A stretch of DNA of 64,000 bases from Macrostomum lignano (Eukaryota): the NCBI GenBank assembly GCA_002269645.1, contig NIVC01003744.1:1-64000 (forward strand), written 5' to 3'. Shown piece by piece: positions 1 to 61,660 of the stretch (positions are counted from its first letter, which is position 1; each line of letters begins with the position of its first letter). The translations under genes were made by a program, and so were the position numbers. The notes below the pieces were generated by a model. It worked only from the letters and a program-made list of their open reading frames with translations, was not told where the DNA came from and did not search any database.

Positions 1-2
1 GG

Positions 3-290
3 TTTGCTGCCCTCCTTGGCGAGAGAGTCCGCGAGCTCATTGTCCAGGATGTTGCTGTGACCAGGTGTCCAGATAATTCTAATCCTGTTAAGGGCTGAGA
101 AAGATTGCACACTGCGGTGGCATTGAGATAGTGCAGCGGAGATATTCTCAGTGGTTAAGGCCTTAATAGCGGCTTGGCCATCATTGTAATATCGAAGTTA
201 TTAATATTCGCCTGGAGCAGGTGCTGGGCGCACTGCTCAATGCGCAAATTTTAGCTTGGAAAACGAGGTGTTCTCACCGAGGTGCAGACT
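3..290 (-). mobile_element. Degenerate RNase H domain of a non-LTR retrotransposon
   Basis: Hand translation of the minus strand gives YNDGQAAIKAL...IRIIWTPGHSNILDNELADSLAKEGS, which is the RNase H DS and W.PGH...NE.AD.LAK motifs. The upstream VFQA.I part is frameshifted. Confidence 0.8.
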
Positions 291-386
291 TTCCTGGAAA
301 AATTTTCTGTAATAGAAACTAAATCTTCAAAACTGCTTACTTGTCAGCCTACTATTAGTAGCAAACTCGCGCATTAATCCACACAG

Positions 387-6850: not shown

Positions 6851-24911
<18,061 letters not shown>

Positions 24912-30175: not shown

Positions 30176-30958
30176 ATGTACCTCTCAGGCCCTCTGCTGA
30201 TGCTGCTGTGCGCTCGGCTCTGCTGGGCTGCTGAGTTCGTCTTTGTCGGCTGCTACAGGGATTTCACGGGTGGCGCCAGGGACCTCGGCGGACTGGACGG
30301 CATGTCCTCCATCGGGCCCTACGCGGTAGCTGCAAAAGGCGTGAACAGGGCCGACATGACGCTGCAGCTGTGCAGCCAGATCTGCGAGCTAGGCAACTTC
30401 AAGTACTTCGGTGCGCAATACAGCAGCCACTGCTTCTGTGGAAACTCGTACGGCAGTCAGGGCGGTGCTCCAGTGAGCGACTGCAACATGAACTGCGCTG
30501 GCAACGCTAGCCAGATCTGCGGCTCGGGAAGCCGAAATTCGGTTTACCAGAACTTTTACCTCCGTCCAAGTGAGCAGCGGCAACTATTGTGGCTGAGGGA
30601 TTTGATGGATTTGATGGGTTTGGATGAATTCGGATGGACCCACTTGTGGCCATTTTAGTCTTCTTTGTTTCCCTAAGCCAAACATTGATAATCAACTGCA
30701 CTGAACTGCGTTTTGCTCATTGCAGTCGGCAACAAATTCGTCGAAACTCCCCGCGTCTACCTGAACCCGACCTCATCTGGCGGGCCCTTCTACAGCACCT
30801 TGCAGCCGGCCAGAAGCCTCATCGACTGCCTGCTGAGTTGCGACGCGAGCTGCCAGGCTGTCCTGTTCCACCTGGACACCTGCTACCTGCTGAAACTGCC
30901 GGCTCTGCCGCAGGAGCTGGTCGGCTTTGATGGTGGGAAGTTCGTTGTCCGTGGCTAG
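30176..30958 (+). CDS. Secreted WSC-domain + PAN/Apple-like protein, paralog 2 (exons 30176-30569, 30726-30958), intact
   Basis: Signal peptide MYLSGPLLMLLCARLCWA; WSC motif FVGCYRD...MTLQLCSQIC...YFGAQYSSHCFCGN...DCNMNCAGNASQICGSGSRNSVY; phase-1 GT-AG intron; exon 2 SLIDCLLSCDASCQAVLFHLDTCYL is PAN-like. Confidence 0.9.
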
Positions 30959-48730: not shown

Positions 48731-48951
48731 AGACAATCAGTCGCCTCATGCACTCCCAGTTGCCAATTTTTTGCCGCGTGTGCGAGCAAGTTGCCCAGGC
48801 GTTATAGATTAAAATAACGCACTAAATTTGTCTGTGGCCCAACCCGCTCGCCCTGGTCATGCGAGCTGAAGTGAAGCGCTGGCTCGCTGTGCTCAGTCCG
48901 GCGAACTCAAATCCCAGCACTCTAAAAGTACAACAGCAATCAACCAGCAAC

Positions 48952-49272
48952 ATGCCCAGCTGCTACGAAGGAATCTTGAAACGCATCCGCAGGCGCTTTG
49001 TGCCCAAACGCTACCGCTCGGATCAGGAGCAGAAGCAGGAGCAGAAGCAGAAGCAGGAGCAGAAGCAGGAGCAGAAGCAGGAGCAGAAGCAGGAGCAGAA
49101 GCAGGAGCAGGAAGCACCGAAGGAGAAACGTGAGGACGCCATTTTCGATGAGTTTCTGCGGCTTCAATTTGAAGTCCAGAGAAACTTCGAAGAACAGTTT
49201 AGGTGGCGGATGATGGCGGCCTGCGGAGCGCTCCCGTCGGTCGACAGTTACTTCTCCTTTGAGGAGTGGTGA
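48952..49272 (+). CDS. Small intronless ORF of unknown function (106 aa, QEQK repeat)
   Basis: MPSCYEGILKRIRRRFVPKRYRSD(QEQK)n...FSFEEW*; AATAAA at 49390 lies inside an A-rich tract; no recognisable domain. Confidence 0.35.
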   Translation: MPSCYEGILKRIRRRFVPKRYRSDQEQKQEQKQKQEQKQEQKQEQKQEQKQEQEAPKEKREDAIFDEFLRLQFEVQRNFEEQFRWRMMAACGALPSVDSYFSFEEW

Positions 49273-49970
49273 TTGCGGATTCCCGGTGAGCGAGGTGGCA
49301 TTTTGCAAGGGCGTAGGCTAGGACTTCTTGATTGTGGCTGCAATTCGAGAGTTCAATTCTTCAAAAAAATCCTAAAAGCGCAAAAAAGCAATAAAACAAA
49401 AGCAAAAAAACAAAAAAACAAAAAAGCAAAAAAAACAAAAAAACAAAAAAACAAAAAAAAACAATCACTTCTTTTCAATCACTAAAAATCAGACACTAAA
49501 TGATTCCAATGATCCATAACAAATTACTCCAATTTTATTTCTGATTGATCATCTATTTAATCAAAAATTCGATTCATTAATAACCCCCAACCCAGATTCC
49601 ACCCTGCCCCTCGCTCCTCAATAAATCCCCAAACCCCACACCGCCCCGCCCCCCTCGCCCCCCCCGAAATTCGCCGCCCGCAGGTGCAGGTGGTACACCG
49701 GCGGCAGCGCAACGACTGGAATTCTCATTCACTCAAACTTTGCATTCATTTATTTACTCTTTAACATTTTCTCTAATCTCTTCTCCCCCTCCATTTCTAA
49801 TATCTTTCCCGACATTCCCATCCCACTCTCCAGATCTCTTCTAATCCTTCTCTATCAACCCTAAAATAATTCCTCTTCTACTCTCCATCTCCCATTTATA
49901 ACAAAATAACCAGTTTAAAATACACCTGTTCCCTCAATTTACTCTTTAATTTTTCTCTAATCTCTTATTT

Positions 49971-50098
49971 CGCTACTCTTCCCTACAATCACGATTCTTT
50001 GCCATGGACAAGAATCGCGATAGTAAAGAAGAGTAGTGGGTCAAACCTGAAGGAGTTGGAAAGAGTTTGGCTGGCTCTTTTCAACTTCAGACAGGTTT
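49971..50098 (+). ncRNA. Candidate twin-hairpin (pre-miRNA-like) cassette, copy 1
   Basis: Stems CGCTACTCTT...AAGAGTAGTG (49971-50038) and AAACCTG...CAGGTTT (50043-50098) with G:U pairs; duplicated at 50533-50654. Confidence 0.35.
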
Positions 50099-50532
50099 CC
50101 CAAACTCTCTTTATATTAAAAAAATAAATTCTTCATTCCCATTATTTTCCATTCCCGCTAAATTAATTGACCAATTCCAATCACTCACTCCCGTTATTCC
50201 CATCCCCCTCCCCGGATCTCTTCCAATCCTTCTTTATCAACCCTTAGATAACATAACATTATCTGCTAATCTCCTTCTCCCATTTATAACAATCTACTAA
50301 CCTGTTACAAATGCACCTGCTCCCTAATTTTACTCTAATTTTTTCATTAATAACTTCTCCCGCTTCTTTTTCTGCTACCTTTCTCAACATTACCATCCCA
50401 CTCCCCGGAACTTTTTCAATTCTAACAAAATTTATCCCCTCCTCTCAATCTCCCATTTATAACAAACAAACCCTGTTACAAATACACCTGCTCCCTCAAT
50501 TTACTATTTAATTTTTCCGTAATCCCTTCTTT

Positions 50533-50654
50533 CGCTACTCTTCCCTACAATCACGATTCTTTGCCAAGAATCGGGATGGTGAGGAGGAGTAGCGGGTCAA
50601 ACCTGAGGGAGTTGGAAAGAGTTTGGCTAGCTCTTTTCAAATTCAGACAGGTTT
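50533..50654 (+). ncRNA. Candidate twin-hairpin cassette, copy 2
   Basis: The 5' arm of hairpin 1 is identical to copy 1; differences in the partner arm mostly keep pairing. Confidence 0.35.
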
Positions 50655-51402
50655 CCCAATATTAACAATAGAATTTCTTCATCCCCCATTATTTTCCATT
50701 CCCACTAAATCACTCCACCCATTCCAATCACTCCCTATCCCGTTATTCCCATCCCACTCCTCGGATCCCTTCCAATCATTTATCACCCTGACATAATCTC
50801 TCTTCCACTCTCCTCTCATTTATAACAAACTAACCCTGTTTCAAGTACACCTGCTCCCTAATATACTCTTCAATTTTTCTGTAATCCCTTCCTTTCGACT
50901 ATTTTTCCGCCATTCCCATCATACTTCCCGGATCCCTTCCGATCCTTCCCTATCAACCCTAACATAACATAATATTATTCTAACCTAAATTTACTCTCTC
51001 TATATGGTATTAACAAAACAATTTCATCATCCCCCGTTATTTTCGTTTCTTATTAAATTAATTCACCATTCCAATTACTCCCTATCCCGCCATTCCCATC
51101 TCACTTCCCGGAATTTTCCCCACCCTAACATAATTTCTCTTCTCTTCTCCTCTTTTATCTTTTACTATTTATCTCCTATTTATAACAAAACAAACCCTGA
51201 TACAAATACACCTGTTCCCTTATTTTCTCTTTAATTTTTCTTCTTCAACATCTCCAGCTCCTTTTCTACAATTACATGTATTCCGCCATTCATATCATTC
51301 CATTCATATTCCCCGGATCTCTTCCATTTCTCTCTATCTACCCTAAAACCATTTCTCTTCTACTCTTAATCTTTTCAATTATTCTGCTCTTTTCTTTGTC
51401 CA

Positions 51403-54400
51403 ACCGGCGGCAACAGCGGCATCTGCGGCGGCAACAGCGGCGGCAACAGCGGCGGCAACAGCGGCGGCAACAGCGGCGGCAACAGCGGCGGCAACAGCGG
51501 CGGATACAGCGGCAACAGCGGCAACAGCGGCGGATACAGTGGCAACAGCGGCAACAGCGGCGGATACAGCGGCAACAGCGGCAACAGCGGCGGCTGCGGC
51601 GGCTGCGGCGGCAACAGCGGCGGCAACAGCGGCAACAGCGGCAACAGCGGCGGCAACAGCGGCAACAGCGGCAACAGCGGCGGCAACAGCGGCGGCAACA
51701 GCGGCGGCAACAGCGGCGGCAACAGCGGCGGCAACAGCGGCGGCAACAGCAGCGGCAACAGCGGCGGCAACAGCGGCGGCAACAGCGGCGGATACAGCGG
51801 CAACAGCGGCAACAGCGGCGGCTGCGGCGGCTGCGGCGGCAACAGCGGCGGCAACAGCGGCAACAGCGGCAACAGCGGCGGCAACAGCGGCAACAGCGGC
51901 AACAGCGGCGGCAACAGCGGCGGCAACAGCGGCGGCAACAGCGGCGGCAACAGCGGCGGCAACAGCAGCGGCAACAGCGGCGGCAACAGCGGCGGCAACA
52001 GCGGCGGCAACAGCGGCGGATACAGCGGCAACAGCGGCAACAGCGGCGGCTGCGGCGGCTGCGGCGGCAACAGCGGCGGCAACAGCGGCAACAGCGGCGG
52101 CAACAGCGGCAACAGCGGCGGATACAGCGGCAACAGCGGCAACAGCGGCGGCTGCGGCGGCTGCGGCGGCAACAGCGGCGGATACAGCGGCGGATACAGC
52201 GGCAACAGCGGCAACAGCGGCGGCTGCGGCGGCTGCGGCGGCAACAGCGGCGGATACAGCGGCAACAGCGGCAACAGCGGCGGCTGCGGCGGCTGCGGCG
52301 GCAACAGCGGCGGCAACAGCGGCAACAGCGGCGGATACAGCGGCAACAGCGGCGGATACAGCGGCAACAGCGGCAACAGCGGCAACAGCGGCAACAGCGG
52401 CAACAGCGGCGGATACAGCGCCGGCTTCGGCGGCAATAGCGGCGGATACAGCGGCGGATACAGCGGCGGCTTCGGCGGCAACAGCGGCAACAGCGGCGGC
52501 TGCGGCGGCAACAGCGGCGGATACAGCGGCGGCTGCGGCGGACACAGCGGCGGACACAGCGGTGGATACAGCGGCAACAGCTGCGGCTGCGGCGACAACA
52601 ACGGCCGCAACACCGACACACTGGTGACAGCAGTGGGGAGGTGGGAGGACCTGTCGGCGGCGTCGGTGTCATCGGCGTGGTAAGAATCAGTTTGCTCCTC
52701 TGTGTCTCCGAGTTTCTGTTTTCACTTCAATTATTCAGCAAGCTCCTGTCTGTGGTTCTATCGTCTTATCGAATACAGGCGGCAACTGCAGCGGCGATGG
52801 CAGCAGCAGCGGCAAAAGCGGCGGCAACAGCGGCGACGGCGGCAACAGCGGCGACGTCGGCAACAGCGGCGGCAACACCGACACACTGGTGACAGCAGTG
52901 GGGAGGATATTTTTTGGCGGCGTTGGTGTCCTCGGCGTGCAGTGGTAAGAATCAGTTTGCTCCTTTGTCTCTGATTCTCTCTTTGTACCCCAATTATTCA
53001 GCAAGCTCTTTCTGTGGATCTATCGTCTTATCGAATACAGGATGCAATAGCGGCGGCAGTGGTGGAGGCTACAGCGGCGGCAACACCGACACACTGGTGA
53101 CAGCAGTGGGGAGGTGGGAGGACCTGTCGGCGGCGTCGATGTCATCGGCGTGGTAAGAATCAGTTTGCTCCTTTGTGCTCTGATTTTCTGTTTGTAACTT
53201 CAATTATTCGGCAAGCTCTGTCACTGACTCAATCGTCTTTTCGAATGCAGGCGGCAACAGCGGCGGACACAGCGGCGGACACAGCGCGGACACAGCGGCG
53301 GACACAGTGGCGGACACAGCGGCGGACACAGCGGCGGACACAGCGGCGGACACAGCGGCGGCAACAGCTGCGGCAACAGCTGCGGCTGCGGCGGCGGCAA
53401 CAACGGCCGCAACACCGACACACTGGTGACAGCAGTGGGGAGGTGGGAGGACCTGTCGGCGGCGTCGGTGTCATCGGCGTGGTAAGAATCAGTTTGCTTC
53501 TCTGTGTCTCCGAGTTTCTGTTTTCACTTCAATTATTCAGCAAGCTCTTGTCTGTGGTTCTATCGTCTTATCGAATACAGGCGGTAACTGCGGCGGCGAT
53601 GGCAGCAGCAGCGGCAAAAGCGGCGGCAACAACGGCGGCGGCGGCCAAGGCGGCGGTGGCCACAACAGCGGTGGCGGCGGAATCGGCAACAGCGGCGGCA
53701 ACGGTGGCGGCGGCGGCAACAACGGAAGCGGCACGTGTGGCAAGAGCAAGGAACCGTGGACCAGTAGCAGAAGGGAATAAATGAGCTTCAGAAGGATGCG
53801 CACAGGCCACTCGATCGAATTGGCGGCCTACAGGAAACGAATAGCGCTCCAAGAAGAAAGCTTGTGCCGGTGTTGCGGCTTGGAAGTAGATACTATGCAG
53901 CATGTGTGGGACTGCCCAGTGACGGAGGAAAGGAGGAGGGCGTGGTGCTGCAGCGGCATTCGGGCGGTTTGTGAGCAACCGGATGAAGCGCTGAAATACT
54001 GGGAATGGTGGAAAGGTCACCAGCCGGTGGGGGTGTCATGGTGGAGGCTCCTAGCCGTAGTTGACTGGTGGTGGTTGGCATCAACAATAACAACAACAAT
54101 GGCAGTGGCGGCAACAACGGCGGCAGCGGCAACAACGGCGGCAACACCGACTGACTGGCGACAGCAGTGGGGAGGTGGGAGGACCTGTCGGCGGCGTCGG
54201 TGTCATTGGCGTGGTAAGAATCCGGTTGCTCTTTTGTGTCTCCGAGTTGATCTTACCACTCCAACCATTCAGCAAGCTCTTGTCTGCGGCTCTATTGTCT
54301 TATCGAATACAGGCGGCGATTGCAGCATCAGTGGCAACAGCGGCGGCGGCGGCAACAGCGGCGGGGGCGGCAACACTGACAGACTGGTGACAGCAGTGGG

Positions 54401-54760
54401 GAGGTGGGAGGACCTGTCGGCGGCGTCGGTGTCATTGGCGTGGTAAGAATCCGGTTGCTCTTTTGTGTCTCCGAGTTGATCTTACCACTCCAACCATTCA
54501 GCAAGCTCTTGTCTGCGGCTCTATTGTCTTATCGAATACAGGCGGCGATTGCAGCATCAGTGGCAACAGCGGCGGCGGCGGCAACAGCGGCGGGGGCGGC
54601 AACACTGACAGACTGGTGACAGCAGTGGGGAGGTGGGAGGATCTGTCGGTGGCGTCGGTGTCATCGGCGTGGTAAGAATCAGTTTGCTTCTTTGTGTCTC
54701 TGATTCTCTCTTTGTACCCCAATTATTCAGCAAGCTCTTGCCTCTGTGGCTCTGTTTGGC
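51403..54760 (+). repeat. Modular array of GGC/AAC/AGC low-complexity blocks separated by 96-99-nt intron-like spacers (7 modules)
   Basis: GTAAGAATC donor-like sites at 52680, 52945, 53153, 53482, 54214, 54443 and 54672; GAAT(A/G)CAG acceptor-like ends at 52778, 53040, 53250, 53580, 54312 and 54541. Confidence 0.8.
53726..54100 (+). mobile_element. 3' fragment of a non-LTR retrotransposon inserted in the array
   Basis: WTSSRRE*MSFRRMRTGHS...CRCCGLEVDTMQHVWDC (R.RTGH plus CCHC knuckle); (AAC/AAT)n tail; 18/20-identical direct repeats at 53706-53725 and 54101-54120. Confidence 0.75.
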
Positions 54761-55156
54761 TTCATAGTCCATTAAACTGGTTCGGCGCCTGACGTGACAA
54801 AATCAGTGTCTGACTTTTTTAGCCTTCAGCTCTTCACTTAGCTGCAGGACGCATTTCGTGGACTTCCTGTGGTTTTGGAAGTCCCCTAGAGAGTCTGCCA
54901 GTGTTTTGGGCCCATAGGCCTGGCCCGTTTCATACGTCACTGGCGAGCTGAATACACCTTCGCGAGCTGGCCGGCAGCTCGGCCCCATAATAGTTTTTCA
55001 TCTTTTTCATGAGCCGCTACGTTGTATGATTATTTTGATCAGCCAATGACAGAGCGGCACTGCGACTCTGGTCAAATGCAACCCTACGTGCTCATATTAA
55101 GCTTGCCTTCAGATTAAAAAATTTGCGTCTTGCGTCTGCAACATCATCTGAATTCA

Positions 55157-55897
55157 ATGAATGCGAAGGCCGGTCTAATCCTTTGCAGTCTCTCAGCTGT
55201 CTGTCTCATTGCTGTTCAAGAGATTGAGCAGTGCTTCAGACAACTCACCAATGGCTCCCTCTGCATCCGCAGCGCCTTCACCCGCAACCTGAGCGGCATC
55301 ACCTCGGACCTGCCGTGCTCTCTGCATTGCGGCTCCGATCAGCGCTGCCAGGCCTTCACCACCGCCGACGGTCTGTGCCAGCTGTTCGTGTTCGACAAGT
55401 GCAGCAAGTCGGTGAGGGACTGCAGCTGCTCCAGGAGAGGCCGCCTGTTCGTGAAGCGGCAGCCGGGACTCTCGGCGGGCTCGCTGTGTCCTGTGGGCTA
55501 CGGCGACGAGCTGTGCGGAGTGAAGTACCGGGTGCTGAAGAACAACGCAACTTGGGCGGTTCAGAGAGGAAGGTGCGAGTCGGAGCCGGGCCTGGTGATC
55601 ATGGCCGATGTCGCTGACGCAGCTGAGCTGAGCCACGTGAATGCCCTGTTTGCCGCTCACTCCCCCACCAATCCCATGTACCTGGGCGGCTACCGGGTGT
55701 TTCCGGGAGCCCAGGAGACAGACGGCTGGTTCTGGGTCGGCTGCAACATCACGATCGGCTCCGTGTGGGGAACTGGTGAACCGAGTGGATTTAGCGAAAT
55801 GGCCACCGCTCGATACCCGACCGTAACAAACGTAGTGGACATCACCGATATGGGTCTCTTTGGCGCCCTTTGTGAATGCGTATCGCCCTTCGACTGA
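55157..55897 (+). CDS. Secreted PAN/Apple + C-type lectin-like protein (246 aa, intronless)
   Basis: Signal peptide MNAKAGLILCSLSAVCLIA; PAN motif CSLHCGSDQRCQAF...CQLF; CTLD motifs CPVGY...TWAVQRGRCES...MYLGG...WFW...WGTGEPS...ALCE. Confidence 0.85.
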   Translation: MNAKAGLILCSLSAVCLIAVQEIEQCFRQLTNGSLCIRSAFTRNLSGITSDLPCSLHCGSDQRCQAFTTADGLCQLFVFDKCSKSVRDCSCSRRGRLFVKRQPGLSAGSLCPVGYGDELCGVKYRVLKNNATWAVQRGRCESEPGLVIMADVADAAELSHVNALFAAHSPTNPMYLGGYRVFPGAQETDGWFWVGCNITIGSVWGTGEPSGFSEMATARYPTVTNVVDITDMGLFGALCECVSPFD

Positions 55898-59114: not shown

Positions 59115-59972
59115 TCATTGCAAGCTTCTGACAAGCCGTTCTACCACTTCAGCAACAGCACACAGTGCGATTAGCGGCAGTAAAATATAATAAGAGACAA
59201 AGCATAATAAAGTCCATGCTACAGCAAGTAGGGACAGGAAAATATTCCAAGAAAATGAAATTACCAAGTAGAGTACGTAACAAGAAAAGGCGGCCGCCAA
59301 GAAGCCACAGAAGGCTTCAGGCCAGCTCTGCAAATCGCACTGAACTCCTTTGTCGACCATCGCACTCGTTTCGCCAGAGGTAAACGTCACCAAGTACCTT
59401 GGAGCCGCCTGCTCAGCTCGGTACACAATGTACTCATCGTTGAGCACACCTCCGCTGCTCTTGGTGGCCCGTTTGGCGAACACAGAGTCGAAGCCTCGAG
59501 TTGTCACCTGCTCAAGGTCAAGCCCAGGACTGGACGCTTTGCAAACCAAGGGTTTTCCGATGGCTACGTAGCACAACAGCAGATACTTTGTTCCATTCTC
59601 TCGGCAGTACTGAGCACTCTTGGTGCTGTCGGTGGCAAAGTAGATCCCCGCACCGAACATGCCTCCCCGGCCGACCCGAAAGCCGTCTTCGATAATTTTT
59701 TCAGCATTTTGTCTCGTCGTCCCGTGAAAAAGCAGCTCTGGCTGGCGATCAGCGCTGTGCAGCTCGGGTTGGCAGTTCCTCAGCCTGCGATCCAGCTCTG
59801 GGTTCTCGATTCTCTCGATTGACTGAATCTGAATCCGGATCCGATGCTCCGGTTTGATGTACCGCTCCACTCTGTCCCGAACTGTCAGATACTCTTGAAC
59901 CGTGTCATCGCTGGCCTCGGTGAGGTGTGTCCGGCGGACTTTGCTTTGTGTCCAGTTTGGCGGAAGGTTGTT
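59115..59972 (-). CDS. PARP/ART catalytic domain protein with C-terminal hydrophobic membrane anchor (terminal exon; 5' exon not resolved)
   Basis: After acceptor TTCTTCAG the exon reads NNLPPNW...IERIENP...LLFHGT...GMFGAGIYFATDSTKSAQY...LLLCYVAIG...FDSV...NDEYIVY, followed by about 55 hydrophobic residues. Confidence 0.88.
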   Translation of the reverse strand, partial: NNLPPNWTQSKVRRTHLTEASDDTVQEYLTVRDRVERYIKPEHRIRIQIQSIERIENPELDRRLRNCQPELHSADRQPELLFHGTTRQNAEKIIEDGFRVGRGGMFGAGIYFATDSTKSAQYCRENGTKYLLLCYVAIGKPLVCKASSPGLDLEQVTTRGFDSVFAKRATKSSGGVLNDEYIVYRAEQAAPRYLVTFTSGETSAMVDKGVQCDLQSWPEAFCGFLAAAFSCYVLYLVISFSWNIFLSLLAVAWTLLCFVSYYILLPLIALCAVAEVVERLVRSLQ

Positions 59973-60612
59973 CTGAAGAATTGTCGAGTTTAAATGAAAG
60001 TTTAGCCAGACAGATGGAGCCTATTTTAAGTACTTAAGTACATGCAGATCTTTCGATTCGGATAAGCTTTAGAAATCAATTGATCAGCTACGTTATGCAT
60101 TCAACAATTTAAGCAGTTCACACACCTGGAATGAGGACTCTGCTGTGGACGCTTGATTACCCATTCGGTGTAGTGTGAATACTCAGATAGGAAACTTCTG
60201 TATAATTCAGTGAGATCTTTACTTGACTCAATTGTATTTATTGTTTTTTCTCTGCTCAGCCTAACAGTCTCAAATGGTTGTAGAAATACGTCCGACCTAC
60301 CATCGAGATGGGGAACTTCGAAATGAGGGCTAGATGGACATACAAGCACAGCTAGCCATCGTAATAGTCAATGTACAAGCATTACATTACGCTCGTGAGA
60401 GCGTGTTCTTACGTGGGTATTTCGCATACGAGCAACTGCTTTTCTCACTTTGTGCATACACCTGCGTGTACAAGATTGTACAATAGCAAAGTAACTCGTA
60501 ATTCGGTATGCTATTTTGCCCGTCTTTCGTCTGTTAACTGGTCAAGCATATTGCCAGTCAAGCGAAGTCTGCACGGCGAGTTTGGTCGGCTTTCGTCAAA
60601 AGGGGAACTTCA

Positions 60613-61660
<1,048 letters not shown>

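What the first reader, a model, noticed from the sequence alone, without database searches (positions are those of the whole stretch)
51403..54760. Modular exon/intron-like array with three alternative low-complexity readings
Seen: seven modules consist of a variable GGC/AAC/AGC block, a conserved ~70-nt cap, GTAAGAATC, a 96-99-nt spacer and GAATACAG. The blocks are stop-free in three frames: Gly-rich (GGNS/GGYS/GGCG), Ala-Ala-Thr, and Arg/Gln. Splicing at the obvious sites shifts frame (module length is 1 mod 3 in most modules), and two frames end in a fixed tail in most modules (TPTHW* or ...SAW*). The spacer also reads through as an open hydrophobic peptide (VVRISLLLCVSEFLFSLQLFSKLL) in several copies. 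Hypotheses: alternative terminal exons giving length-variable structural proteins, frame-rotating splicing, or a decayed exon-duplication gene.
Basis: partly seen in the sequence, partly recalled or inferred. Interest (0 to 1): 0.7.

Follow-up and report, generated by a model that had tools for sequence, protein, structure and literature searches.

The report
Duplicated glycine-rich exon–intron cassettes, flatworm
This is a real tandem array of seven GC-rich "exon" plus roughly 100-base "intron" cassettes in a repeat-rich flatworm (Macrostomum-like) genome, most likely the partly decayed 3' part of a lineage-specific glycine-rich gene; the three "alternative readings" follow automatically from the repeat and are not evidence of a special coding trick.

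Summary
There are seven caps, seven GTAAGAATC sites and six complete spacers of 96-99 nt that end in GAATRCAG. Intact exon lengths are 1 mod 3.

The window is eukaryotic. Its flanking genes match Macrostomum lignano best (57-66% aa), and about 25% of it is tandem repeat.

Being open in three frames is trivial here: the 1.2-kb block has one stop across all six frames.

Several features are not trivial:
- GC alternates between 66-72% (exons) and 39-46% (spacers).
- The GTAAG donor is invariant.
- Spacer length matches annotated M. lignano introns of 96 and 104 nt.
- The cap diverges 1-6% where the spacers diverge 15-24%.
- The spacers carry non-3n indels and stops, so the hydrophobic read-through peptide is not coding.

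Codon usage favours the Gly frame, which also ends naturally in the last module (TGG-TAA, then ATTAAA 96 nt on).

No start codon, signal peptide, homolog or transcript evidence was found. The cap peptide has no credible relative among 1.84 billion proteins.

Best reading (about 0.5): exon-intron cassettes of a lineage-specific Gly/Ser/Asn-rich gene, multiplied by slippage and unequal crossing-over and now partly decayed. Frame-rotating translation is not excluded but is unlikely.

The parts
49740..51402 (+). C/T-rich degenerate tandem repeat (units of about 180 and 550 bp) that abuts module 1. Its last 159 nt (51257-51414) contain no AG. The first AG after this tract is at 51415-51416 (AACAG|C), a possible acceptor for module 1.
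51403..52608 (+). Module 1 variable block, made of 9- and 12-nt units (GGC AAC AGC / GGC GGC AAC AGC / GGC GGA TAC AGC / GGC GGC TGC) with higher-order periods of 60 and 228 nt. The Gly frame reads GGNS/GNS/GGYS/GGC: G 46.5%, S 24%, N 19.5%, C 4.2%, Y 4%. There is no ATG/GTG/TTG in that frame.
52609..52679 (+). Cap of module 1 (71 nt). Gly frame: NTDTLVTAVGRWEDLSAASVSSA(W). Arg/Gln frame: QHRHTGDSSGEVGGPVGGVGVIGV. Ala/Thr frame: TPTHW, then TGA at 52625-52627. The same cap recurs at 52874, 53082, 53411, 54143, 54372 and 54601.
52680..52778 (+). Spacer/intron 1 (99 nt, type A), GTAAGAATC...GAATACAG.
52779..52944 (+). Module 2 exon (166 nt). Its cap is rearranged (a 5-nt deletion and a 5-nt insertion), so the length class is kept.
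52945..53040 (+). Spacer/intron 2 (96 nt, type B). Two separate indels and a stop break the read-through frame.
53041..53152 (+). Module 3 exon (112 nt).
53153..53250 (+). Spacer/intron 3 (98 nt, type D), ending in GAATGCAG. Stops occur in the read-through frame.
53251..53481 (+). Module 4 exon (231 nt; GGHS repeats). A 1-nt deletion at about 53287 shifts the Gly frame into the Ala/Thr frame.
53482..53580 (+). Spacer/intron 4 (99 nt, type A). It has 2 differences from spacer 1.
53581..54213 (+). Module 5 exon (633 nt), disrupted by a foreign insert. Its cap carries TGA in the Gly frame at 54152-54154.
53726..54108 (+). Insert in module 5, with approximate borders. A possible 14-nt target duplication GGCGGCAACAACGG lies at 53712 and 54109. 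The insert holds a 100-aa ORF with RTGH...CxxC...HxxxC followed by a CAA-rich tail. I read it as the 3' end of a 5'-truncated non-LTR retrotransposon, from my own knowledge of such ORF2 tails. No tool confirmed this.
54214..54312 (+). Spacer/intron 5 (99 nt, type C).
54313..54442 (+). Module 6 exon (130 nt).
54443..54541 (+). Spacer/intron 6 (99 nt, type C), identical to spacer 5.
54542..54671 (+). Module 7 exon (130 nt). It has 3 differences from module 6.
54672..54776 (+). Last donor-like site and truncated type-B spacer with no spacer-type acceptor. In the Gly frame TGG-TAA (54670-54675) ends the ORF. ATTAAA at 54771-54776 is a possible poly(A) signal, so this stretch may act as a 3' UTR.

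Best explanation
The locus is a set of tandemly duplicated exon-plus-short-intron cassettes from the 3' part of a lineage-specific gene in a Macrostomum-type flatworm genome. The gene's reading frame is, or recently was, the glycine frame (GGNS/GGYS/GGC repeats ending in ...NTDTLVTAVGRWEDLSAASVSSAW).

Two mutational processes built it. Replication slippage of 9/12-nt units made the blocks variable in length. Unequal crossing-over multiplied units of 229 to about 800 bp that span cap, intron and the start of the next block; the youngest copies are 98-100% identical.

The 96-99-nt spacers are, or were, spliceosomal introns. The Ala/Thr and Arg/Gln readings and the hydrophobic spacer peptide are by-products of the sequence, not products of the gene. 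The array is at least partly decayed.

**Shown:** the anatomy, the duplication history, the slower divergence of the cap, the intron-like properties of the spacers and the codon-usage preference.

**Inferred:** that the locus is or was transcribed and spliced, that the Gly frame is the coding frame, and that the product would be a Gly-rich structural or secreted protein.

**Open:**
- where translation starts;
- which AG is used. The obvious ACAG|G breaks the Gly frame. The next AG|C, 10-25 nt downstream and inside a Ser codon, would keep it, joining every exon through a Cys codon.
For: 1. **Splice-like signals.** GTAAGAATC is invariant in 7/7 modules and GAATRCAG in 6/6. M. lignano cis-splice motifs are GT[G/A]AG and CAG (PMC8629364).
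2. **Spacer size.** Spacers are 96-99 nt. Two annotated introns in M. lignano PARP paralogs measure 96 and 104 nt and are T-rich with GT-AG ends.
3. **Composition.** Spacers are 39-46% GC and 34-41% T. Exons are 66-72% GC and 4-14% T.
4. **Conservation.** Between independent spacer lineages the cap differs at 1-4 of 69 sites and the spacer at 15-24 of about 100 (Fisher p = 0.0015-0.025). The 35 nt next to the following block are as diverged as the spacer middle, so homogenisation spreading from the blocks does not explain the conserved cap.
5. **Spacers are non-coding.** They carry 1- and 2-nt indels and stops.
6. **Codon usage.** GGC, AAC, AGC, TAC and TGC are each the preferred codon in four bona fide ORFs of this window. 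Mean log relative codon usage in module 1 is +0.57 for the Gly frame, +0.10 for Arg/Gln and -0.31 for Ala/Thr. The third-position variants GGT/GGA/GGG, AGT and AAT are silent only in the Gly frame.
7. **Natural ending.** In the Gly frame the last module ends with TGG-TAA, followed by about 95 nt and ATTAAA.
8. **Recent duplication.** The stretch from the end of module 1 into module 2 is about 98% identical to that from module 4 into module 5. Module 5/6 is 99-100% identical to module 6/7.
Against: - No start codon or signal-peptide exon was found for the Gly frame in the 2 kb upstream.
- Splicing at the conserved first AG does not keep the Gly frame. Exons of 1 mod 3 give Gly, then Arg/Gln, then Ala/Thr with TGA.
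- Several modules are damaged: modules 4 and 5, and the cap of module 2.
- No homolog of the cap peptide exists among 1.84 billion representative proteins, apart from one weak hit to a repetitive sushi-domain protein. There is no Pfam match.
- About 25% of the window is tandem repeat, which raises the prior that this is just another repeat.
- No transcript data could be consulted.
Confidence: 0.5

Rival explanations
1. The locus is an inert compound satellite. It would be one more tandem repeat in a repeat-rich region, whose unit happens to contain GT...AG-like ends. It would be neither transcribed nor spliced.
For: - About 16 kb of the 64-kb window lies in strong tandem arrays.
- M. lignano has 15% simple or tandem repeats genome-wide (PMC5730564).
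- The youngest units are 99-100% identical, which shows active array turnover.
- There is no homolog, no start codon and no frame continuity.
- A retroelement-like insert and an indel are tolerated.
Against: - Divergence is very uneven within the unit: 1-6% in the cap against 15-24% in the spacer.
- The donor 9-mer is invariant and the spacer length is species-typical.
- Exon-like and intron-like composition alternates sharply.
- Codon usage is biased towards one frame.
- None of the window's other tandem arrays has this two-part structure.
Confidence: 0.22
2. There is no splicing at all. Each module would be a copy of the terminal coding segment plus 3' UTR of a Gly-rich gene. TGG-TAA would be the true stop, and the 'donor' GTAAG would be a by-product of that stop. 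At most one copy would be used: module 1 as the ORF end, or module 7 with its ATTAAA.
For: - The Gly frame ends with W-TAA in all seven modules.
- The last module is followed by ATTAAA at a UTR-like distance.
- The first 20 nt after the stop are as conserved as the cap.
Against: - The internal spacers carry no poly(A) signal.
- The spacer ends in a conserved pyrimidine-rich tract plus CAG in 6/6 copies.
- The spacer's length and composition match real Macrostomum introns.
Confidence: 0.12
3. The modules are alternative or mutually exclusive exons. One module per transcript would be chosen between constant flanking exons, giving length-variable Gly-rich proteins. The 1 mod 3 length would enforce exclusivity through frameshift.
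For: - All intact modules share the same length class and the same splice-site sequences.
- The blocks differ widely in length and composition.
Against: - No constant upstream or downstream exon was found.
- The sequence after module 7 gives only short ORFs and then the promoter-like region of the next gene.
- Module 1 lacks the spacer-type acceptor.
- The length class is explained by 3n-unit slippage alone.
Confidence: 0.07
4. There is true multi-frame use, in one of two forms. In the first, consecutive splicing at the first AG gives a three-part protein: Gly-rich, then Arg/Gln-rich, then Ala/Thr-rich ending in TPTHW*. In the second, spliced-leader trans-splicing onto ACAG|GCG uses the leader's terminal AUG to start small Ala/Thr peptides, one from each module.
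For: - The frame arithmetic works for modules 1-2-3.
- The TGA of the Ala/Thr frame sits at a fixed place in 6/7 caps.
- The M. lignano spliced leader ends in ATG, and operon spacing peaks near 100 bp (PMC8629364).
Against: - Ala/Thr-frame codons are the non-preferred ones.
- The Arg/Gln frame has a stop in module 1 and in the caps of modules 6 and 7.
- There is no signal peptide and no internal poly(A) signal.
- ATACAG does not fit the YTNCAG trans-acceptor motif at its first position.
- Openness in these frames is automatic.
Confidence: 0.05

Closest known systems
Iterated exon-intron modules of repetitive structural protein genes, for example the spider flagelliform silk gene (Hayashi & Lewis 2000; cited from my own knowledge, not checked here)
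   Same: - Glycine-rich low-complexity exons alternate with homologous introns.
- Whole exon+intron units are multiplied and homogenised by unequal crossing-over.
- Exon length varies through small-unit slippage.
   Different: - Here the exons do not keep one frame at the obvious splice sites.
- The introns are about 100 nt and less conserved than the exon ends.
- Several modules are damaged.
- No expression evidence or homology exists.
Tandem exon duplication and mutually exclusive exon clusters (Dscam1-type; from my own knowledge)
   Same: Tandem copies of one exon carry conserved splice sites. A length that is not a multiple of 3 could in principle enforce exclusivity.
   Different: - The exons are low-complexity and of very unequal length.
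- No constant flanking exons were found.
- No docking or selector RNA structure was found: z-scores were -1.2 and -0.15 and there was no covariation.
Trematode eggshell precursor p14 (44% Gly, 11% Tyr; PMC3499410)
   Same: A flatworm protein class dominated by Gly, with Tyr, Cys, Asn and Ser. The module 1 Gly frame is 46.5% Gly.
   Different: - Only 4% Tyr.
- No signal peptide found.
- No sequence similarity detected.
- The resemblance is in composition only.
Antifreeze glycoprotein genes, (Thr-Ala-Ala)n (PMC6410882)
   Same: In one frame the 9-nt unit ACAGCGGCA reads Thr-Ala-Ala. Arrays of this kind grow from short GC-rich repeats.
   Different: - The dominant period is 12 nt (AATA), with Asp and Ala runs interspersed.
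- No signal peptide, propeptide or cleavage sites.
- Non-preferred codons in that frame.
- The source is a flatworm, not a polar fish.
Simple and tandem repeats of Macrostomum genomes (15% of M. lignano; PMC5730564)
   Same: Same genomic milieu and the same mutational processes.
   Different: The unit has two compartments with different composition and different divergence, and it carries canonical splice signals.

Membership tests
Spliceosomal intron (short flatworm type) | GT...AG boundaries that match the species' donor GT[G/A]AG and acceptor CAG motifs | tested here: met
   GTAAG in 7/7 and CAG in 6/6 modules. Motifs taken from PMC8629364.
Spliceosomal intron (short flatworm type) | Length and composition typical of introns in the lineage | tested here: met
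   Spacers are 96-99 nt and 39-46% GC. Two annotated M. lignano introns measure 96 and 104 nt and are T-rich. That is only two comparators.
Spliceosomal intron (short flatworm type) | Removal from a transcript | not testable with these tools
   No transcript data for the source species. The protein databases hold no product from this locus.
Protein-coding multi-exon gene | One reading frame maintained across the splice junctions | tested here: inconclusive
   Not maintained at the conserved first AG, because the exons are 1 mod 3. The Gly frame is maintained only if the next AG|C, 10-25 nt downstream, is used (my reading).
Protein-coding multi-exon gene | Start codon, plus a signal peptide if the product is secreted | tested here: not met
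   No ATG/GTG/TTG in the Gly frame of module 1, and no plausible upstream exon in 49.3-51.4 kb.
Protein-coding multi-exon gene | Excess of silent over replacement change | tested here: inconclusive
   Too few substitutions in the cap: about 2/7 silent in the Gly frame and 3/7 in the Arg/Gln frame. Codon usage favours the Gly frame.
Antifreeze glycoprotein | Long uninterrupted (Thr-Ala/Pro-Ala)n with a signal peptide and cleavage sites | tested here: not met
   The frame reads AATA/AADT/poly-Ala, with no Met or signal peptide. Definition taken from PMC6410882.
Trematode eggshell precursor (p14-like) | About 44% Gly together with about 11% Tyr, and secretion | tested here: not met
   Gly is 46.5% but Tyr is 4%. 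No signal peptide and no homology.
Non-coding satellite | Divergence spread evenly over the repeat unit, with no compartment under constraint | tested here: not met
   The cap diverges 1-6% and the spacer 15-24%.
Spliced-leader RNA gene array | The leader exon sequence followed by a donor and an Sm site, in a regular array | tested here: not met
   The M. lignano leader is absent from the window. There is no Rfam match. The modules are irregular in length.
Structured RNA element | Folding more stable than shuffled sequence, with covariation | tested here: not met
The covariation term is only -1.09 kcal/mol; just 3 of 47 predicted pairs have a compensatory change, and the one spacer stem is broken without compensation in modules 5 and 6.

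The most novel reading that the evidence does not exclude
Frame-rotating splicing is real. Every cassette is 1 mod 3, so consecutive splicing at the conserved ACAG|G acceptors would translate the same DNA repeat successively as Gly-rich, Arg/Gln-rich and Ala/Thr-rich segments, closed by the fixed TGA in the third cap. One repeat family would then encode three chemically different low-complexity domains in a single protein.
Probability: 0.04. Interest if true: 0.75.

Novelty: new member of a known kind. Interest (0 to 1): 0.3.

Why it matters
If the locus is transcribed, it would be a very young example of how a low-complexity structural gene grows. It would grow by whole exon-intron cassettes as well as by codon-unit slippage, in a genome where tandem repeats are unusually abundant. 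It would also show how such growth collides with reading-frame maintenance. If it is silent, it serves as a warning: GC-rich triplet repeats are open in all six frames, so multi-frame openness carries no information. Either way the biological weight is modest until expression is shown.

Tried and rejected
1. **Antifreeze-glycoprotein lead.** The Ala/Thr frame and the ACAGCGGCA unit suggested it. I read the gadid AFGP paper. The gene structure, repeat period, composition and host do not fit.

2. **Homolog searches for the cap.**
   - The word-index search with cap peptides in two frames plus the read-through found nothing. It hit the 8000-candidate ceiling, probably because of low-complexity words.
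   - An exhaustive profile search with the Gly-frame cap gave one hit, P0034. This is a multi-sushi-domain protein with four weak stretches (GGNKSSVCTAAGRWENVSLVC). I judged it chance: its score is the sum of four weak repeated stretches, it lacks the cysteines, and the cap has no Pfam Sushi match.
   - The Arg/Gln and Ala/Thr frames were not searched exhaustively.

3. **Synteny.** Three M. lignano loci around PARP paralogs (L001-L003) hold no array. M. lignano lectin homologs are UniRef-only, with no contig. A Logan contig (L004) was uninformative. Exact-sequence look-ups of the window's lectin ORF failed, so the source species seems absent from the collections.

4. **DNA scan.** A metagenome scan for a 24-nt cap core returned 0 hits.

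5. **RNA explanations.** Rfam, tRNA scanning, folding and the alignment fold gave nothing significant.

6. **Minus-strand gene** (MTPTPP...CCRR protamine-like ORFs). The spacer has stops in all three minus frames and no GT-AG context.

7. **Pfam on the three block translations.** No hits.

8. **Retroelement nature of the insert.** Pfam, PDB and BLAST against the window and loci found nothing. The assignment rests on motif recognition from my own knowledge.

9. **Adhesive proteins Mlig-ap1 and Mlig-ap2.** These are Lys/Arg-rich and multi-domain, so they are unrelated.
Full report
**What is there**

- A 1.2-kb block of 9/12-nt units (GGC AAC AGC and relatives) is detected by TRF as period 12 with 103 copies.
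- A 71-nt cap follows the block, then GTAAGAATC, then a spacer that ends in GAATACAG.
- Six further, much shorter modules of the same build follow.
- The cap core occurs 7 times against 0.01 expected. GTAAGAATC occurs 7 times on the + strand against 0.33 expected.
- Spacers measure 99, 96, 98, 99, 99 and 99 nt. The seventh loses homology at about 54750-54760 and has no such acceptor.
- Exons 2-7 measure 166, 112, 231, 633, 130 and 130 nt.

- Module 4 has a 1-nt deletion at about 53287.
- Module 5 is interrupted at about 53726-54108 by foreign sequence. This sequence contains a 100-aa ORF with RTGH...CxxC...HxxxC and a CAA-rich tail. I read it as the 3' end of a non-LTR retrotransposon, but no tool confirmed that.
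- The cap of module 5 has TGA in the Gly frame.
- The cap of module 2 is rearranged by a 5-nt deletion and a 5-nt insertion.

**Where the window comes from**

The window is eukaryotic.
- The two clear flanking ORFs are a C-type-lectin-like protein with a signal peptide (55157-55897, +) and a PARP catalytic domain protein (59115-59990, -). Their best hits are all Macrostomum lignano proteins, at 57-66% identity.
- Window 1-301 is 90% identical at the DNA level to an M. lignano contig.
- No near-identical protein exists in the collections, and exact look-ups failed.
- The source is therefore probably a Macrostomum species, or a close relative, that the databases do not hold.
- About 16 kb of the 64 kb lies in strong tandem arrays. 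M. lignano has 15% simple or tandem repeats genome-wide (PMC5730564).

**What is trivial**

The 1.2-kb block has one stop codon in all six frames together. ORFs of 362-444 aa are listed in five frames, and the sixth, the Gly frame, is open but has no start codon. A repeat made of GGC, AAC and AGC cannot produce stops in any frame, so 'three alternative readings' says nothing about coding.

The 1 mod 3 exon lengths are also automatic. The modules descend from one exon, and their blocks change length in 9/12-nt steps.

**What is not trivial**

1. The unit has two compartments. Exons are 66-72% GC and 4-14% T. Spacers are 39-46% GC and 34-41% T.
2. The spacers begin with an invariant GTAAG and end with a pyrimidine-rich stretch plus CAG. 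These are the motifs reported for M. lignano cis-splicing (PMC8629364).
3. Two annotated introns that I reconstructed in M. lignano PARP paralogs are 96 and 104 nt, T-rich and GT-AG. That is the same size class as the spacers.
4. The spacers fall into four lineages: A (modules 1 and 4), B (2 and 7), C (5 and 6) and D (3). Between lineages the cap differs at 1-4 of 69 positions and the spacer at 15-24 of about 100 (Fisher p = 0.0015-0.025). The first 20 nt of the spacer are as conserved as the cap. The last 35 nt, which touch the next block, are as diverged as the middle. Homogenisation spreading outward from the recombinogenic blocks therefore does not explain the conserved cap.
5. The spacers differ by 1- and 2-nt indels and contain stops in modules 2 and 3. 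The hydrophobic 'peptide' is what a T-rich intron looks like when translated.

No RNA structure explains the conservation.
- Folding z-scores are -1.2 for the cap and -0.15 for the spacer.
- There is no meaningful covariation: the covariation term is -1.09 kcal/mol, and the one spacer stem is broken without compensation in modules 5 and 6.
- Rfam and tRNA scans found nothing above noise.
- The M. lignano spliced leader is absent from the window.

**Which frame**

Four bona fide ORFs of the window prefer GGC, AAC, AGC, TAC and TGC, which are exactly the codons of the Gly frame. Mean log relative codon usage over module 1 is +0.57 for the Gly frame, +0.10 for Arg/Gln and -0.31 for Ala/Thr. The third-position variants in the blocks (GGT, GGA, GGG, AGT, AAT) are silent only in the Gly frame. 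They create Val/Asp or Trp, and one TAG, in the other two frames.

In the Gly frame the last module ends with TGG-TAA, followed by about 95 nt and ATTAAA at 54771. That looks like a normal terminal exon.

Against this, the few substitutions inside the cap show no clear silent excess in any frame (about 2/7 in the Gly frame, 3/7 in Arg/Gln; my count). The Gly frame also has no start codon and no upstream signal-peptide exon within 2 kb.

**The frame problem**

Splicing at the conserved ACAG|G gives TG|G (Trp) and moves the reading from the Gly frame to Arg/Gln. The next junction moves it to Ala/Thr, where a fixed TGA in the cap stops it. So modules 1-2-3 would give a Gly-rich, Arg/Gln-rich, Ala/Thr-rich product.

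The Gly frame continues across every junction only if the next AG is used. That AG lies 10-25 nt downstream (10-13 nt in most modules) and always sits inside a Ser codon (AG|C). The junction then reads TG|C (Cys) and the exons become symmetric. The only AG after the 159-nt AG-free pyrimidine tract upstream of module 1 is also of this AG|C type. This is an inference from sequence, and without cDNA I cannot choose between the two acceptors.

**History**

The stretch from the end of module 1 into module 2 is about 98% identical to the stretch from the end of module 4 into module 5. Modules 5/6 and 6/7 are 99-100% identical over 229 bp. The array is therefore being reshaped now by unequal crossing-over on top of small-unit slippage. 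Damage is tolerated in modules 4 and 5.

**Search for relatives**

- The cap peptides found nothing in the word-index search, though that search hit its candidate ceiling.
- The exhaustive profile search of 1.84 billion representatives with the Gly-frame cap found one weak, repetitive sushi-domain protein, which I regard as chance.
- Pfam finds nothing in any block translation or in the cap.
- A metagenome DNA scan found nothing.
- Three M. lignano loci near PARP paralogs hold no array.

**Comparison with known things**

- *Architecture.* The nearest analogue is the iterated exon-intron organisation of repetitive structural protein genes such as spider flagelliform silk (from my own knowledge), and tandem exon duplication in general.
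- *Composition.* The Gly frame (46.5% G, 24% S, 19.5% N, about 4% each of C and Y) recalls the trematode eggshell precursor p14 (44% G, 11% Y; PMC3499410). It has much less Tyr, and no homology or signal peptide.
- *Antifreeze glycoproteins.* The Ala/Thr frame superficially recalls them, but every defining feature fails.

**Verdict**

The most likely explanation (about 0.5) is a set of duplicated exon-intron cassettes from a lineage-specific Gly-rich gene, partly decayed, with the Gly frame as the meaningful one.

The rivals are:
- an inert compound satellite (about 0.22);
- unspliced copies of a terminal exon plus UTR (about 0.12);
- alternative or mutually exclusive exons (about 0.07);
- true multi-frame use (about 0.05).

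Interest is modest (0.3) until transcription is shown.

Noticed in passing
window 53726-54108: A foreign insert of about 383 bp inside module 5, in the same orientation as the array. It holds a 100-aa ORF (MSFRRMRTGHSIELAAYRKRIALQEESLCRCCGLEVDTMQHVWDCP...) and a CAA-rich tail, and GGCGGCAACAACGG occurs on both sides. It looks like the 3' end of a 5'-truncated non-LTR retrotransposon. There is no Pfam, PDB or BLAST support and no other copy in the window.
   Followed up: partly
window 49740-51402: A C/T-rich degenerate tandem repeat with nested periods of about 180 and 550 bp, directly upstream of module 1. Its last 159 nt contain no AG dinucleotide.
   Followed up: partly
window 48859-49272 and 49362-49461: A 137-aa ORF with an (EQK)n repeat and a stop codon, followed 90 nt later by a 100-nt A-rich tract. 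This looks like a retrocopy or the tail of a retroposed sequence. Pfam hits are weak low-complexity matches, all below their thresholds.
   Followed up: no
window 55044-55897: A C-type-lectin-like ORF (246 aa from the ATG at 55157, with a signal peptide), 66% identical to M. lignano 'C-type lectin domain-containing' proteins but with no Pfam hit. Upstream lie a CCAAT-like and a TATTAA-like motif, and a CCTTCAG site at about 55107-55113 that fits the YTNCAG trans-splice acceptor motif. The gene lies only about 385 nt after the array's ATTAAA, so an operon-like arrangement with the array is conceivable.
   Followed up: partly
window 59115-59990 (-): A single-exon PARP catalytic-domain ORF with a long hydrophobic C-terminal tail. 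It belongs to a family with several paralogs in M. lignano (57-66% identity), two of them on one contig.
   Followed up: partly
whole window (for example 8900-10935, 13336-14290, 60615-61647): About 25% of the window is in strong tandem arrays. These include a 34-nt unit with 61 copies, (CTAT)239, (TCTG)260, (ACAG)147 and many 14-84-nt minisatellites. Several of them are open in multiple frames and generate long spurious ORFs.
   Followed up: no
window 1-301; L002 18157-18469: 90% nucleotide identity over 313 aligned columns to M. lignano contig NIVC01001462.1. This is probably a shared transposable element, and it is the strongest DNA-level link to the genus.
   Followed up: no
window about 381-555: On my reading, this stretch encodes a casein-kinase-I-like C-terminal segment (...[32 protein letters not shown]...) that appears to be frameshifted just afterwards.
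   Followed up: no
window 30176-30658: An ORF with a WSC domain (Pfam E = 1.3e-15).
   Followed up: no
P0034 residues 269-289 and three further stretches: The only database match to the Gly-frame cap is the C-terminal half of sushi domains in a 767-aa protein (GGNKSSVCTAAGRWENVSLVC against GGNTDTLVTAVGRWEDLSAAS). It is 10/21 identical but lacks the cysteines, and I judged it chance.
   Followed up: partly
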